Of a DNA stretch of 64,000 bases, positions 37,101 through 61,100 are shown in pieces. Every line of letters begins with the position of its first letter. Positions within the stretch are counted from its first letter, which is position 1. The stretch comes from Lytechinus pictus (taxonomy: Eukaryota). The stretch is from the NCBI RefSeq assembly GCF_037042905.1, contig NC_087253.1:17298001-17362000 (forward strand), written 5' to 3'. The position numbers and the translations under genes are program-made. Below the pieces are notes generated by a model. The model worked only from the letters and a program-made list of their open reading frames with translations, did no database searches and had not been told where the DNA came from.

Positions 37101-40100
37101 TGGCTTAGAAGATCAGCACATTGCCTGCATTGAAATATAAATGAATAGGAAGATGAGGGTGGGCAGTATTCTAATCATCATCATCATGAAGACAACGACG
37201 ATGATGACGAAGATGGTGACGATGATGATGGTGATGATGGAGATGATGGTGATGATGATGATGAAGATGTAAAGGGGGATGACAACATGGACATGACAAT
37301 AATGATGGTGGTGATAAAGATCACGACAAACAAAGATAATGATGAAGACGACATGATGATGGTGATGATGATAATGATGTTAATGATGATTATGGTGATG
37401 GTGATGATGATGATGATTATGGTGATGATGATAATGATAAAGTTAATGATGATGAAGAAGATGATGATGATGATGGTGATAATGATAATGTTAATGATGA
37501 TGAGTNNNNNNNNNNNNNNNNNNNNNNNNNNNNNNNNNNNNNNNNNNNNNNNNNNNNNNNNNNNNNNNNNNNNNNNNNNNNNNNNNNNNNNNNNNNNNNN
37601 NNNNNNNNNNNNNNNNNNNNNNNNNNNNNNNNNNNNNNNNNNNNNNNNNNNNNNNNNNNNNNNNNNNNNNNNNNNNNNNNNNNNNNNNNNNNNNNNNNNN
37701 NNNNNNNNNNNNNNNNNNNNNNNNNNNNNNNNNNNNNNNNNNNNNNNNNNNNNNNNNNNNNNNNNNNNNNNNNNNNNNNNNNNNNNNNNNNNNNNNNNNN
37801 NNNNNNNNNNNNNNNNNNNNNNNNNNNNNNNNNNNNNNNNNNNNNNNNNNNNNNNNNNNNNNNNNNNNNNNNNNNNNNNNTGACAATGATGATGACATTG
37901 ATGATGATGAGGATGATGAGGATGGTTGAGATGATGGCGATTTCAATGATAATGATAATAGTGACAAAACTCATGACTGCGTTGATGGTGAACATGAGGT
38001 AGATAATATGATGCCTTTCAAAGTAGCAAATTCCTAATAACTAAATGTATAATCACTGTCATTATTAGCATAAATCATACAAGAATTAGCATTTCATATA
38101 ATTTTTTAACAATGCTGCCGGAGCCAATAAGATAAGTTAACAAAATGATACCCAATCCCAAACTCAGGTAGCCTCCACTCCAGCCTGATCGCACACTCAC
38201 CTAGCCTCGACTCCAGCCTGCGTGAGATCAAACCTCATCCGATCCCCTGACTTACTGAGGTACGTGAAATACCTCTGGGCGGTCTTGAGCTCCGACACCG
38301 CGCCCAACACGGTCTTGAGATTAGACTTCTCATCACGCAAGACGTACATGGCAATACGCTGTAGCACCAGGGACAGGTTGTATGTTATGAGAGTGTCATG
38401 GGGAGAAACACGCTTTGCCTGATGGAAGGTTATGATTAAGAGAATTAAATCCAAGTAAGTATACAGTCATCAAACTCGTACAGAAATACTTGAAATATAT
38501 TTTAAAACATTTTTAGTTTAAACATTGCCTGTTGAGTGTCTAATAACAAAGATGACTCATTTTATTTCTAGGCCAGAGAAGAACATTATGAATAATGGAT
38601 ACATGCTTTGTATGTCATCAGAACAAATTATGAAAGATATGGACAATCCTTAAAGGGATGCTCCAGGCTGGAAATATTTATATATAAATAAATAAAGTAA
38701 AATTCACAGAGCATAATGCTGAAAATTTGATCAAAATCTGATAATAGCGAAGTTATTGAATTTTATAGTTTAGCAATATATTGTGAAAACAGTTATGCAT
38801 GTCATCATGAATATTCATTACACGGGCTGATGATGTCACATCCCCACTTTTTTCTTATTTTATTACATGAAGTCATAATTGTTTCATTTTTTTCATACAT
38901 GTGTGAATGTGTCTCCCTTATGATGAAATAAGTTGCAGCAATGAATATCTATTAAATGCACTGAATCAGTGGTTATTCCAATGTTTTTGGTTCTTAAATG
39001 AAAAAATTGAAAAAACCTTACTTCATATAATAAAATACAAAAGAACAAGTGGGGATATGACACTGTCAGTTTTCTCATTGAATATTCATGAAGTCTTGCC
39101 TAGAACTGTTTCACCAGAATAATGCAAATCTTTAAAATGCTATAGCTTTGTTATTCCTTGTCTGATTTTGATCAAATTGTCAGTATCTTGTTTGTCTGAT
39201 TTGTCTAAATCTGTTCAAATCATATTTTCTTCAGCCTGGAGTACCCGTTAAATATAAAACTATTGATAATTACATATTTCTATTAACAAGAACACATACA
39301 ATACACAAATTTGTGACCGTCTGCCTCAAAACTAATAACAAAGCACCAGGCAAGGTACTTTGTTATTAGCTTAAACAGTAATTCTGTCTCTCTTAATTCA
39401 AATTTAGTGAATAACCTTATCTTGGAAAGAGAAACTATTTTTCTCCATACTGTCAAAAATATAAATTGTAAATGTTTAGAACCAGGCTAATTCGTACCAA
39501 ATTTTAGCAGTGGATGTTTCACATCATTCTTGTCTGAGATATGATATAAAACCATAATGAAATGCAATATCTGTTATTTTTTAAGGCACACTTCATTACC
39601 CTATAAGACCCAGATACAAATTTTAATAGGAGTGATGAGGGGGTGGGGTTGCTGGAGGAAGGAGACGTGTTACCTTGAGCAAAGTCTGTCTGCACTCCTT
39701 CAGCTTTCCTGTTTTGAAGTACGCCCTCGCTAGGTAGCTCAGGACAGTCGTGTTGTGGTACTTGAAGAACTTCTTGATGCAGTTCTCATACTGGATAAGG
39801 AAGCAAAAAGAAATGTTAACCAAGATATAATATTTTTTTGAAAGTGCAACATTTTCTAAGACATTATGATCAGAGCTCCGTAACACAAGGTTAATTTGAA
39901 AGAACGATTCTGATTGGTTCCTACTCAGTCAACTGAGCAAATTGCGCATGTGACGAAGGTCTTGATAGGTCAGTTCATTTAGCGATTAATCGCTAACCTT
40001 TGTGTTATGGAGCCCAGGTCATTAAAGTGGTTCAGTTATTTAATATGCAATGATGAATTCATGAGAAGGGGTGAAGATAGTAAGCAATTTTAGTCTTGCC

Positions 40101-58100: not shown

Positions 58101-61100
58101 AGCGTAAGAACAGAAATTTCAACATTTTTCAAGATTTAATAGGAGTAGAGGAGACGGTATTCTATCAAAGTAAAAACAAGGTTAATTGATTCAGCACATG
58201 AAAGGGTGACCAGTCGTGTGCTAAGTCAAGCTCAAAGCAAGAGTAGGGGGGGGTGCACTGGGTGCATATGCACCCTCCCGCTGAGGCAGAGGAGTTCTGA
58301 CACTGGCAAGCAAAATGACATTTGTACCCCTTCTTCTGCTTTCCACGGCTGATTTTCCAAACTTTAGTTCCACCCAGGGTGCTACATAAGCACTTGCCCG
58401 ATTGCTCGGGGCAAGTAAAAGTTAAAGTCGGGCAAGTGTTTTGAAATAAAGACCAAAACTACTTGCCCGAATTGGGCAAGCAAAAATTCTCACAGCAGAA
58501 TGACCACAATTAGGGTCGATATGATATATCGATCCTAAATTTGGTCATGGCGGACAAGATAAAATCACTTAGGAAAAAGAAATTCAAGAACAAGGTACAT
58601 CAGTTCATGTCAAAAGAGAAAAAAAGGTAAATGGTTTATAAAACTGCAATATTTTCCTTTGAAGAGGTAAAACTTTTTTTTCAAGGATTGTTTTCGGGCA
58701 AGTATATTCCAACTATTCAAAAAAATTGCTTCTAAAAATTTATGTAGCACCCTGGTTCCACCTCTCAAGATGTGCACCCCCATACCACTTTAGTTCCACC
58801 TCCACAGGATGTGCACCTCCCGATGCTCAAACCAGCCCACGCCCTTGCTCAAATTAAGATCAGTCTTATATTATTGCTGATTGCTTACCTAGTAAAGCTG
58901 GAATGTTATTAGGAGCTTGGTTGAGAACAAAGTTAAACTGAGCATCGGCCTGGTCCATTTTATCACCTTCAAGAAGACAGAAACAAGCACGGCCAAGAAG
59001 ATGGTTCTAGAATGGAAAGAGAAACAAAAAAAATTTGAAAACTCTTTTAACTGACCAGATTTATGTCTTAAAAAGAGTTCAAATAGATTAGAGTCAAAGT
59101 TAAATCAAACTAAATTGCGACTGATCTGAAATTCTCTTGACTACACACAGTAAGATCAATCACAATTTGAGTTTGATCTGAATTTATCACTCCTCTTTGT
59201 GTCATAGTGCCAAGGACTAGTGTAAAAGTTAAAAGAATAATTACAGCAAAATATTAGAAAGCATAAGATCTTATATTACGTCGTCATGTAATATAAAACA
59301 AGTGGAATGCCTCTGGCCGTCTCACCTGCATCACGCGATTCAATATAGCAGCAGTGCTGATTTTTGAAAACTACTATAACTCGCACAAGATGTTCAGTTA
59401 TACTTGGTTACTCTTATTTCCACGTTTTATGAACTAGACCAATACACTTATAGAGATATGATGGCAATTCAACAAATACCCCCAACGTGGCCAAAGTTCT
59501 TTGACCTTACATGACCTTTGACCTTGATCATGTGACCTGAAACTCGCACAGGATGTTCAGTGATACTTGATTACTATTATGTCCAAGTTTTATGAACTAG
59601 ACCAACACACTTTCAAATTTATGGCTGTAATTCAACAAATACACCAATATGGCCAAAGTTCATTGACCCTAAATGACCTTTGACCTTGATCATGTGACCT
59701 GAAACTTGCACAGGATGTTCAGTAATACTTGATTACTATTATGTCCAAGTTTCATGAATCAGATCCATAAACTTTCAAAGTTATGATGGTAATTCAACAG
59801 ATACCCCCAATTCGGCCAAAGTTCATTGACCCTAAATGACCTTTGACCTTGGTCATGTGACGTGAAACTCATGCAGGATGTTCAGTGATACTTGATTAAC
59901 CTTATGTATAAGTTTCATGAACTAGGTCCATATATTTTCTAAGTTATGATGACATTTCAAAAACTTAACCTTAGGTTAAGATTTTGATGTTGATTCCCCC
60001 AACATGGTCTAAGTTCATTGACCCTAAATGACCTTTGACCTTGGTCATGTGACATGAAACTCAGGCAGGATGTTCAGTAATACTTGATTAACCTTATGGC
60101 CAAGTTTCATGAACTAGGTCCATATACTTTCTAAGTTATGCTGTCATTTCAAAAACTTAACCTCAGGTTAAGATTTGGTGTTGACGCCGCCGCCGCCGTC
60201 GCCGCCGCCGTCGGAAAAGCGGCGCCTATAGTCTCACTCTGCTATGCAGGTGAGACAAAAACTATGGGATTCTGAATAATGGTGGATTTTTGTGTAGCAT
60301 TTACGTCTGTCAATTACAACACTCAACAACTACCCTGATTTTGCTATATAGCTGCTAGTGTACACCCAAAACTGTAAAGCTGTGATTGTGTAATACAATA
60401 ACCCTGTTCACACTGACCTGATCGTACATAACAATCCTATCAGCCATGGTGTAGAGAAGCGTGGCCTGTGTGAACAGCTCCTTCTCAGAGCCTGGTATAT
60501 TGGGATATCATACGTATTGTACAACTGCCTGTTCATACTTACCTGATCGTACTTAACAATCCTATCAGCCATGGTGTAGAGAAGCGTGGCCTGTGTGAAC
60601 AGCTCCTTCTCAGAGCCTGGTATATTGGGATATCATACGTATTGTACAACTGCCTGTTCATACTTACCTGATCGTACTTAACAATCCTATCAGCCATGGT
60701 GTAGAGAAGCGTGGCCTGTGTGAACAGCTCCTTCTCAGAGCCTAATATATTTGGATATTATACAAATTGTACAACTACCTGTTCATACTAACATGATTGT
60801 ACATAACAATCCTATCGGCCATGGTGTAGAGAAGCGTGGCCTGTGTGAACAGCTCCTTCTCAGAGCCCAGTATATTTGGATATTATACGTACAACTGCTT
60901 GTTCATACTTACTTGATCGTACATAACAATCCTATTGGCCATGGTGTAGAGAAGTGTTGTTTATATGAATAGCTCCTTCTCAGAGCCTAGTATATTGGGA
61001 TATTATACGTACAACTGCATGTTCATACTCACCTGATCGTACATAACAATCCTATCGGCCATGGTGTAGAGAAGCGTGGCCTGTGTGAACAGCTCCTTCT

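What the first reader, a model, noticed from the sequence alone, without database searches (positions are those of the whole stretch)
38168..61100. CTR9 exon-intron boundaries are repeatedly tandem-duplicated, producing arrays of decoy splice sites
Seen: at about 8 of 21 exons, a unit made of part exon plus adjacent intron is repeated into the intron. Donor side: exons ending at 61033 (5 extra copies), 41121 (2), 40189 (1) and 38201 (1 short). Acceptor side: exons starting at 52872 (3-4), 50141 (several, degenerate), 47342 (4) and 42420 (2). Unit sizes run from about 33 to 170 bp and divergence varies widely, so these are independent events of different ages. The coding exon stays intact each time. 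I saw no such copies at the 11 coding exons of the two neighbouring genes. Inference: either a mutational process focused on splice junctions of a highly or germline-expressed gene, or a survivor/visibility effect, since boundary-spanning duplications leave the ORF intact. Either way it supplies raw material for cryptic or poison exons, intron growth and intron gain.
Basis: partly seen in the sequence, partly recalled or inferred. Interest (0 to 1): 0.75.

Follow-up and report, generated by a model that had tools for sequence, protein, structure and literature searches.

The report
Repeated splice-junction copies in urchin CTR9
In a sea-urchin CTR9 gene, eight exon edges have been copied in tandem into the neighbouring introns, leaving look-alike splice sites with no sign of use where RNA could be checked; this is a dense example of a known, tolerated repeat type ("mirage"), and whether such copies arise preferentially at exon edges is still open.

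Summary
A minus-strand CTR9 orthologue (21 located coding exons, 34132-62330) has tandem copies of part exon plus adjacent intron at 8 of its 40 internal junctions. They sit at the donors of the exons ending at 61033, 41121, 40189 and 38201, and at the acceptors of the exons starting at 52872, 50141, 47342 and 42420. Units are 33-173 bp. Intron-part identity to the real unit runs from 0.68 to 0.96, so the events are separate and of different ages. Every real exon is intact.

This kind is known: amphioxus "mirages" and the human F7 IVS7 VNTR. The same scan has already noted dozens of cases elsewhere in this genome, which earlier notes call Lytechinus pictus.

RNA reads cover exons x2, a, b and c but give zero depth on the five donor decoys and on the distal acceptor decoy. 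The splice joints themselves were not listed, and the other seven arrays had no RNA check. Every decoy tested would bring a premature stop or a frameshift, and none has a good partner site.

Eight of nine local duplications span a junction. Chance gives P from 2e-6 to 2e-2 depending on assumptions, but the gene was picked after the fact. The most likely reading is tolerated minisatellite births that lengthen introns. A junction-focused mutational process is not excluded. I found no evidence for poison exons or intron gain.

The parts
34132..62330 (-). CTR9 orthologue, 21 located coding exons (hi-lo): x2 62330-62232, a 61272-61033, b 59006-58889, c 57467-57378, d 52872-52616, e 50723-50616, f 50141-50022, g 47342-47136, h 44655-44527, i 43801-43618, j 43133-43045, k 42420-42235, l 41264-41121, m 40281-40189, n 39790-39674, o 38418-38201, p 37124-36989, q 36315-36178, r 35781-35639, s 35123-34899, t 34408-34132. 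The first exon with the ATG was not located.
   Evidence: all borders are AG/GT, and the exons joined in a script give 1105 codons with one terminal stop; exon d matches human CTR9 residues 195-281, E 1e-41.
60405..61112 (-). Array a, donor side: the real donor at 61033 (CAG|GTGAGT) followed by 5 decoy units of 120-125 nt (about 80 nt of exon end plus about 45 nt of intron). Decoy donors: 60913 CAA|GTAAGT, 60793 CAT|GTTAGT, 60668 and 60543 CAG|GTAAGT, 60418 CAG|GTCAGT.
   Evidence: RNA depth is 0 on 60397-60948 against 12-19 on exon a. A contig from organism B lies across a unit border at 60581-60715.
52785..53198 (-). Array d, acceptor side, proximal part: the real acceptor at 52872, a decoy at 53034 with intact AG and pyrimidine tract, and a degenerate copy reaching 53198. 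Unit 162 nt (88 nt of exon start plus about 75 nt of intron).
56967..57228 (-). Array d, distal part: about 1.6 units, with an intact decoy acceptor at 57138, only 240 nt downstream of the exon c donor.
   Evidence: RNA depth is 0. Organism B contig letters are listed at 57163-57190.
53199..56966 (.). Later insert of 3.8 kb that splits array d. It holds an inverted repeat (54195-54396 against 55608-55793) and has no Pfam domain.
50129..50469 (-). Array f, acceptor side: about 5 decayed short units, spaced 38-50 nt, each with a pyrimidine tract, (T)AG and about 13 nt of the exon start. Copies at 50388, 50338, 50295, 50253 and 50215.
   Evidence: 5 matches against 0.45 expected.
47265..47583 (-). 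Array g, acceptor side, proximal part: the real acceptor at 47342 and a decoy at 47514. Unit about 172 nt (71 nt of exon start).
49175..49718 (-). Array g, distal part: three units with decoy acceptors at 49277, 49442 and 49615. They are separated from the proximal part by a 1.6-kb insert (47584-49174).
42291..42732 (-). Array k, acceptor side: the real acceptor at 42420, one full decoy unit (the homologue of the junction at 42592 has lost its AG) and one partial unit. Unit 172 nt (130 nt of exon).
40690..41229 (-). Array l, donor side: the real donor at 41121 (CAG|GTTAGT), decoys at 40952 (identical 9-mer) and 40790 (CTG|GTTAGT), and a partial third unit. Unit 162-169 nt.
40092..40249 (-). 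Array m, donor side: the real donor at 40189 (ATG|GTAAGT) and one decoy at 40116 (ATG|GTAATT). Unit 73 nt.
38155..38220 (-). Array o, donor side: the real donor at 38201 (TAG|GTGAGT) and one 33-nt decoy unit whose junction reads TAC|CTGAGT (GT lost).
52277..52576 (-). The only intron-only local tandem duplication in the gene: unit about 105-112 nt, 2-3 copies, about 67% identity. It starts 35 nt downstream of the exon d donor and does not include it.
   Evidence: (D15).
59293..60396 (.). Member of an abundant genome-wide repeat family (163/192-nt units), not a local duplication.
   Evidence: RNA depth 2000-4000 and DNA word depth about 1-2 million..

Best explanation
These are eight separate mirage-type minisatellites. 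In each, a local tandem duplication copied a piece that happened to include an exon edge and its splice signal, probably by replication slippage, unequal exchange or end joining. The type of event is inferred.

The full exon survives only at the edge of each array. For donor arrays that is the first unit, and for acceptor arrays it is the last. Each extra copy is therefore half an exon carrying one splice signal and no usable partner site. I infer that exon definition, and for donors the 5'-to-3' order rule shown for human F7, keeps splicing at the authentic sites. Any use of a decoy would add a premature stop or a frameshift and should be removed by nonsense-mediated decay.

Afterwards the arrays expanded by further unequal exchange, decayed by point mutation, and in two introns were split by later insertions. 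The net effect is intron growth and no function.

The crowding in one gene most likely reflects four things together: a high rate of small tandem duplications in this genome, originally short introns, longer visibility of copies anchored to a conserved exon, and choice of the gene after the fact.
For: - Structure is shown.
- Further expansion within arrays: some decoys are closer to each other than to the real unit (l: 93-97%, against 0.78-0.79 to the real exon part; g: 92% between 47444-47577 and 49207-49340).
- Decay: GT or AG is lost in o, k and some f units, and sites are weakened in a_c2, m and g_c4.
- Inserts split arrays d and g.
- RNA depth is zero over the a decoys and the distal d decoy, while exons x2, a, b and c are covered. 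RNA-type contigs X1-X8 hold 0.24 of the sampled words of 60300-61300, which equals the share of exon a.
- Every decoy tested gives a stop or a frameshift. Partner-site scores are mostly below 6 bits, against 4-16 bits for real sites.
- Local tandem duplications are also common outside the gene (about 5 in 34 kb).
- Known parallels: amphioxus mirages with 150-160 bp units and undisturbed splicing (PMC3087553; PMC3902484), and the F7 IVS7 VNTR where only the first donor is used (PMC1557585).
- Earlier scan follow-ups on other genes of this genome reached the same reading. I did not check them.
Against: - Under uniform placement within the gene, 8 of 9 local duplications spanning a junction is unlikely. 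P is 2e-6 with present introns, 1e-4 with ancestral-like introns, and 2e-2 with a threefold visibility bonus as well.
- The single intron-only array also lies within 35 nt of a donor.
- Four of nine units fall at 162-172 bp (d, g, k, l), which a size-blind process does not predict.
- Three decoy donors in array a are as strong as, or stronger than, the real one and show no decay.
- In arrays l and m the exon part of the decoys is more diverged than the intron part. This is the reverse of the simple neutral expectation.
- Splice joints of CTR9 were not listed by the read tool, so the evidence for non-use is depth only, for one array plus one distal copy.
Confidence: 0.65

Rival explanations
1. 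A mutational process aimed at exon edges. Small tandem duplications, with a preferred size near 165 bp, would arise more often at or next to exon-intron junctions. Possible causes are template switching or break repair tied to positioned nucleosomes, or to transcription and splicing in the germline. CTR9 would be a hot gene for this process.
For: - Nominal excess of junction-spanning arrays within the gene.
- The one intron-only array is 35 nt from a donor.
- Units of 162, 162-169, 172 and 172 bp in four arrays.
- Similar sizes in amphioxus globin mirages (150-160 bp) and in unchecked scan notes (163 bp for DDX19, about 163 bp for SLC4, about 150 bp for CSTF3).
- Many genes of this genome were noted with such arrays.
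- No local direct repeat in the dioxygenase-like neighbour gene.
Against: - The gene was picked after the fact from hundreds of windows.
- The junction position within units (exon share 0.30-0.84) is compatible with a uniform spread.
- Short ancestral introns and a visibility bonus weaken the excess to P about 0.02.
- An earlier follow-up on another gene judged its clustering to fit chance (unchecked).
- Other units here are 33, about 46, 73 and 125 bp.
- No mechanism is known that centres a duplication on a splice junction.
Confidence: 0.2
2. The arrays have a function. Extra U1 or U2AF binding sites beside the real sites would tune splicing efficiency, intron retention or protection from premature polyadenylation. 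Alternatively, low-level decoy use coupled to mRNA decay would set CTR9 dosage.
For: - Three decoy donors in array a keep a perfect consensus.
- At least part of array a, and the distal d copy, are present in a second species label.
- The exon parts of the acceptor-side decoys are better kept than the intron parts (0.88 against 0.73).
Against: - No RNA over the decoys.
- Many decoys have lost or weakened their signal.
- The exon/intron asymmetry is roughly what constraint on the real exon alone predicts (my estimate from the figures).
- Unit sizes, copy numbers and ages differ from site to site.
- Comparable arrays in amphioxus and human F7 are reported as silent.
Confidence: 0.07
3. Assembly artefact: haplotype or read mis-joins created false tandem copies.
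For: None directly. No DNA run of the same species was available to lay on the arrays.
Against: - Copies differ by 3-30% and carry their own substitutions and indels.
- Two arrays are interrupted by kilobase inserts.
- A contig from another species' DNA run crosses a unit border of array a with 6 mismatches in 135 nt, and another covers the distal d unit.
Confidence: 0.02

Closest known systems
Amphioxus 'mirage' minisatellites (Adh3, globins BflGb6/BflGb9, troponin C, PGBD5)
   Same: Tandem repeats whose unit spans an intron-exon border, on either the donor or the acceptor side. Many units keep AG or GT, regular splicing is undisturbed, and unit sizes include 150-160 bp (PMC3087553; PMC3902484).
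   Different: The organism here is an echinoderm, and I found no paper in the held library that describes mirages in sea urchins. Eight junctions of one conserved single-copy gene are hit. Two arrays are old enough to have been split by later insertions. Length polymorphism and somatic instability, reported for Adh3, were not testable.
Human F7 intron 7 37-bp VNTR
   Same: The first repeat unit spans the exon-donor border, so the real donor is followed by identical pseudo-donors that stay silent, and the most upstream site is chosen (PMC1557585). Array a behaves the same way by RNA depth.
   Different: Units here are larger (120-125 bp) and partly diverged. Acceptor-side arrays also occur. There are no minigene tests here.
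Intron gain by tandem genomic duplication (Rogers model; Hellsten 2011; Gao and Lynch 2009, as reviewed in PMC3443670)
   Same: A small internal tandem duplication duplicates splice signals inside a gene.
   Different: In that model an exonic AGGT is duplicated and a new intron is born. Here existing introns are lengthened and no new intron position is seen. Both borders of exon d coincide with the ends of homology in exon-sized ORFs from other animals.

Membership tests
Mirage-type junction minisatellite | The tandem repeat unit contains part of an exon plus the adjacent part of the intron, including the splice signal | tested here: met
   Eight arrays were mapped against a checked gene model.
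Mirage-type junction minisatellite | The authentic exon is intact at one end of the array | tested here: met
   The joined exons give an open frame of 1105 codons. Exon d aligns to human CTR9 without gaps.
Mirage-type junction minisatellite | Regular splicing is not disturbed and the decoys stay silent | tested here: inconclusive
   Depth is zero on the array a decoys and on the distal d decoy, while the exons are covered. The splice joints were not listed, the tool silently drops human-like reads, and the other seven arrays lay outside the single 5.5-kb read call.
Mirage-type junction minisatellite | Copy-number instability or polymorphism | not testable with these tools
   Only short contigs of one other species label were available.
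F7 IVS7-like donor VNTR | The real donor is followed by near-identical functional-looking donors, and only the most upstream is used | tested here: met
   Decoy scores are 13.3, 13.3 and 11.8 bits against 12.3 for the real site. No RNA extends past 61033. This rests on depth only.
Intron gain by tandem duplication of an exonic AGGT | A new intron, bounded by the two copies of a duplicated exonic AGGT, at a position that lacks an intron in relatives | tested here: not met
   The arrays lie inside pre-existing introns. Both borders of exon d coincide with the ends of homology in exon-sized ORFs from other animals. The other introns were not compared.
Tandem exon duplication (mutually exclusive or cassette exons) | Whole-exon copies with both splice sites | tested here: not met
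   Copies hold 13-130 nt of one exon end only, and no good partner site lies within 250 nt.

The most novel reading that the evidence does not exclude
Small tandem duplications in sea urchins (and amphioxus) arise preferentially at or beside exon edges, with a favoured nucleosome-scale unit near 165 bp. They would then be a main and so far unrecognised driver of intron growth in these very polymorphic genomes. CTR9, with 8 of 40 junctions hit, would be a hot gene for that process.
Probability: 0.17. Interest if true: 0.75.

Novelty: new member of a known kind. Interest (0 to 1): 0.38.

Why it matters
Taken singly, each array is an ordinary, tolerated repeat of a known type. The locus is useful in two ways.

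First, it is a natural test set for splice-site choice. About 18 decoy donors and acceptors of graded age and strength sit in one constitutively needed gene. Three of the decoy donors score as well as or better than the real site yet show no RNA.

Second, it bears on how introns grow. Intron c-d is 4.5 kb, and apart from the array and a later insert only about 240 nt remains.

If the excess at junctions and the size mode near 165 bp survive a genome-wide test, they would point to a chromatin-linked or transcription-linked duplication process that has not been described.

Tried and rejected
- Splice joints from RNA. All of these came from the abundant repeat at 59293-60396, so CTR9 junction reads were not shown and only depth could be used.
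- Orthologous loci. The word search with exon d returned exon-sized ORFs at no more than 81% identity and no close urchin relative. The best hit lies on a compact-gene contig of an unrelated animal (L001) and was dropped. Several hits look vertebrate-like. I aligned them once and did not fetch, save or search more of them.
- The big representative search was not run. The protein's identity was not in doubt, and 50% clusters would not have given urchin loci.
- Transposon nature of the array-splitting inserts. Ten ORFs had no credible Pfam family, so the inserts remain of unknown origin.
- Junction centring. The exon share of the units (0.30-0.84) does not differ from a uniform spread.
- Faster loss of GT or AG in the decoys. 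The observed retention fits the overall divergence.
- Gao and Lynch 2009 (PMC2791625) is not held, so it is cited only through the review read.
- The joined spliced model was used only inside scripts, for a frame check, and was not sent to any search tool. Searches were made exon by exon, by reference.
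Full report
**Gene and model.**
The region holds a CTR9 orthologue on the minus strand. A stop-free stretch around 52592-52912 matches human CTR9 residues 195-281 at E 1e-41. 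From stop-free segments I set 21 coding exons between 62330 and 34132 by coordinates. All 41 splice sites read AG or GT. Joined inside a script only, the exons give 1105 codons with a single terminal stop. The first exon with the start codon was not located. The joined model was not sent to any search tool. Earlier notes of this scan call the genome Lytechinus pictus; I did not verify the species.

**The observation.**
TRF, the repeat finder, blastn of each exon against the window, self-blastn and local alignment agree on eight arrays.

| Array | Side | Real site | Unit (nt) | Exon part (nt) | Copies |
|---|---|---|---|---|---|
| a | donor | 61033 | 120-125 | about 80 | five: 60913, 60793, 60668, 60543, 60418 |
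| l | donor | 41121 | 162-169 | about 100 | two: 40952, 40790; plus a partial third |
| m | donor | 40189 | 73 | 61 | one: 40116 |
| o | donor | 38201 | 33 | 20 | one: 38168 (GT lost) |
| d | acceptor | 52872 | 162 | 88 | 53034; degenerate copy near 53198; about 1.6 units at 56967-57228 |
| g | acceptor | 47342 | about 172 | 71 | 47514; then 49277, 49442, 49615 |
| k | acceptor | 42420 | 172 | 130 | one full (42592) and one partial |
| f | acceptor | 50141 | spacing 38-50 | about 13 | about five decayed units |

- For array f, there are five matches to the exon start in 474 nt against 0.45 expected.
- Arrays d and g are each cut in two by a later insert, 53199-56966 and 47584-49174.
- Ten ORFs from these inserts have no credible Pfam family.
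- Intron-part identity to the real unit runs from 0.68 (k) to 0.96 (m).

**Other repeats in the gene.**
- One intron-only local duplication exists at 52277-52576 (unit about 105 nt). It starts 35 nt after the exon d donor and does not include it.
- The array at 59378-60191 is not local. RNA depth of 2000-4000 and a DNA word depth of one to two million over 59293-60396 show it belongs to an abundant genome-wide family.

**The decoy sites.**
I scored sites with matrices built from the gene's own real sites.
- The a decoys score 9.0, 7.2, 13.3, 13.3 and 11.8 bits, against 12.3 for the real donor.
- l 40952 has the same 9-mer as the real donor.
- d 53034 and d 57138 keep AG and a pyrimidine tract (11.1 and 9.8 bits, against 14.4 for the real site).
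- The g decoys keep AG but share a purine-interrupted tract (0.2-8.4 bits, against 12.5).
- k, o and some f units have lost the dinucleotide.
- Use of any tested decoy would add sequence with an in-frame stop within 8-35 codons, or would shift the frame.
- No decoy has a good partner site within 250 nt. Most partner scores are below 6 bits. The decoys are half exons.

**RNA and a second species.**
The single read call covered 56901-62400, with three ribo-depleted RNA runs of the same species label and one DNA contig set of a second label.
- On the strand of the gene, depth was 5-20 on x2, 12-19 on exon a, 2-11 on exon b and 1-12 on exon c.
- Depth was 0 on 60581-60948 and at most 1.3 on 60397-60580, which is the stretch holding the a decoys.
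- Depth was 0 on 57085-57268, which holds the distal d decoy.
- RNA-type contigs X1-X8 hold 0.24 of the sampled words of 60300-61300, which is exactly the share of exon a.

Limits of this evidence:
- The joints table was filled by the abundant repeat, so no CTR9 splice joint was listed.
- The tool drops human-like reads silently, so a dip in depth is weak evidence.
- Decayed mis-spliced RNA would be missed.
- The seven other arrays were outside the call.

From the DNA contigs of the second label, one 135-nt contig lies on 60581-60715 with 6 mismatches and crosses a decoy-unit border, and differing letters from a second contig are listed at 57163-57190, inside the distal d unit. At least parts of two arrays therefore exist outside this assembly, and they predate or match the split of the two labels.

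**Is the crowding more than chance?**
I placed each unit length uniformly in the gene and kept only placements that are intron-only or span one junction. The chance of spanning a junction is then 0.05-0.20 with present introns. It is 0.09-0.34 after removing extra copies, the two inserts, fold-back elements, the abundant repeat and the N run. For 8 or more of 9 local arrays, P is as follows:

| Intron model | No visibility bonus | Threefold visibility bonus |
|---|---|---|
| Present introns | 2e-6 | 1e-3 |
| Ancestral-like introns | 1e-4 | 2e-2 |

- Outside the gene, the same methods find about five local duplications in 34 kb. Small tandem duplications are thus common in this region generally.
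- None lies in the dioxygenase-like neighbour gene at 8.3-15.4 kb.
- The excess is nominal. The gene was picked by eye from hundreds of windows, the removal of later material was possible only in introns that have arrays, and a genome-wide test could not be run here.
- The exon share of the units (0.30-0.84) is compatible with a uniform spread, so nothing shows centring on the junction.

**Unexplained points.**
- Four of nine units fall at 162-172 bp (d, g, k, l). Amphioxus globin mirages are 150-160 bp, and unchecked scan notes give 163 bp for DDX19, about 163 bp for SLC4 and about 150 bp for CSTF3.
- In arrays l and m the exon part of the decoys is more diverged from the real unit than the intron part (0.78-0.80 against 0.89-0.96). 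Unequal exchange with crossovers in the intron part would explain this, but that is inference.
- On the acceptor side the intron part is the more diverged one (0.73 against 0.88). By my estimate from the figures, this is roughly what constraint on the real exon alone predicts.

**Comparison with what is known.**
- Tandem duplications of intron-exon borders are described in amphioxus as "mirages". They occur on both sides of exons, with AG or GT in many units and normal splicing (PMC3087553; PMC3902484).
- The human F7 intron 7 VNTR starts across the exon 7 donor, and only the most upstream donor is used (PMC1557585).
- Intron gain by duplication of an exonic AGGT is a different outcome (PMC3443670) and is not met here. 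The arrays lie in existing introns, and both borders of exon d coincide with the ends of homology in exon-sized ORFs from other animals.
- I found no paper in the held library on such arrays in sea urchins.
- This scan has already noted and followed up many cases on other DNA of the same genome, among them BRCA2, TMEM209, NCAPG, VPS51, DDX19, CSTF3, a MAM-domain gene with seven arrays and an adenylyl cyclase with four.

**Verdict.**
The most likely reading (0.65) is eight independent, tolerated mirage-type duplications that lengthen introns and stay silent because each copy is only half an exon. A junction-focused or nucleosome-scale mutational process remains possible (about 0.2) and is the interesting open question. 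A regulatory role (0.07) and an assembly artefact (0.02) are unlikely.

Noticed in passing
window 59293-60396: Block of 163/192-nt tandem units belonging to a very abundant repeat family. RNA depth is 2000-4000, almost all from one strand (first mate on +), and DNA word depth in another species' contigs is about 1-2 million. Many internal joints suggest variable unit arrangements among the genomic copies.
   Followed up: partly
window 38650-39251, 51149-51785, 62426-62849; related pieces at 11453-11574 and 26179-26314: Fold-back (palindromic) elements of about 400-640 bp in CTR9 introns. The elements at 38650-39251 and 51149-51785 resemble each other and pieces elsewhere in the window, which suggests a MITE-like family.
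   Followed up: no
window 47342-47365 against 47514-47537, 49277-49300, 49442-49465: The 20 nt before the real exon g acceptor are all pyrimidines apart from a few A residues. The decoys with coordinates listed here (the fourth, at 49615, is similar) share a version of this tract interrupted by G. This fits either strengthening of the real tract or weakening of the decoy ancestor.
   Followed up: partly
window 60925-60960 (array a, copy 1): A cluster of about 7 substitutions, mostly C-to-T and G-to-A, within 22 nt of the exon part of the decoy nearest the real exon. The other four copies lack them.
   Followed up: no
window 8284-15404, + strand: Neighbour gene that, by eye from the translation, looks like a gamma-butyrobetaine / trimethyllysine dioxygenase. 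No family search was run. No local direct repeat was found at its exons.
   Followed up: partly
window 27080-28726, + strand; 22559-23087, - strand: A 549-codon open frame that looks, by eye, like a non-LTR retrotransposon reverse transcriptase, and a decayed related fragment. No family search was run.
   Followed up: no
window 4188-4556, 31501-31952, 32240-32726, 23758-23880, 25072-25201: Local tandem or near-tandem duplications outside CTR9. The first three have spacings of 179, 136-150 and 383 bp; 23758-23880 and 25072-25201 have units of 62 and 53 bp. Their relation to any exon was not examined.
   Followed up: no
window 37005-37069 and 34152-34237: In-frame coding repeats inside CTR9 exons p (33 nt x 2, glutamate/arginine-rich) and t (12 nt x 7, Gly-Gln-Glu-Ser). 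These are low-complexity coding sequence, not junction arrays.
   Followed up: no
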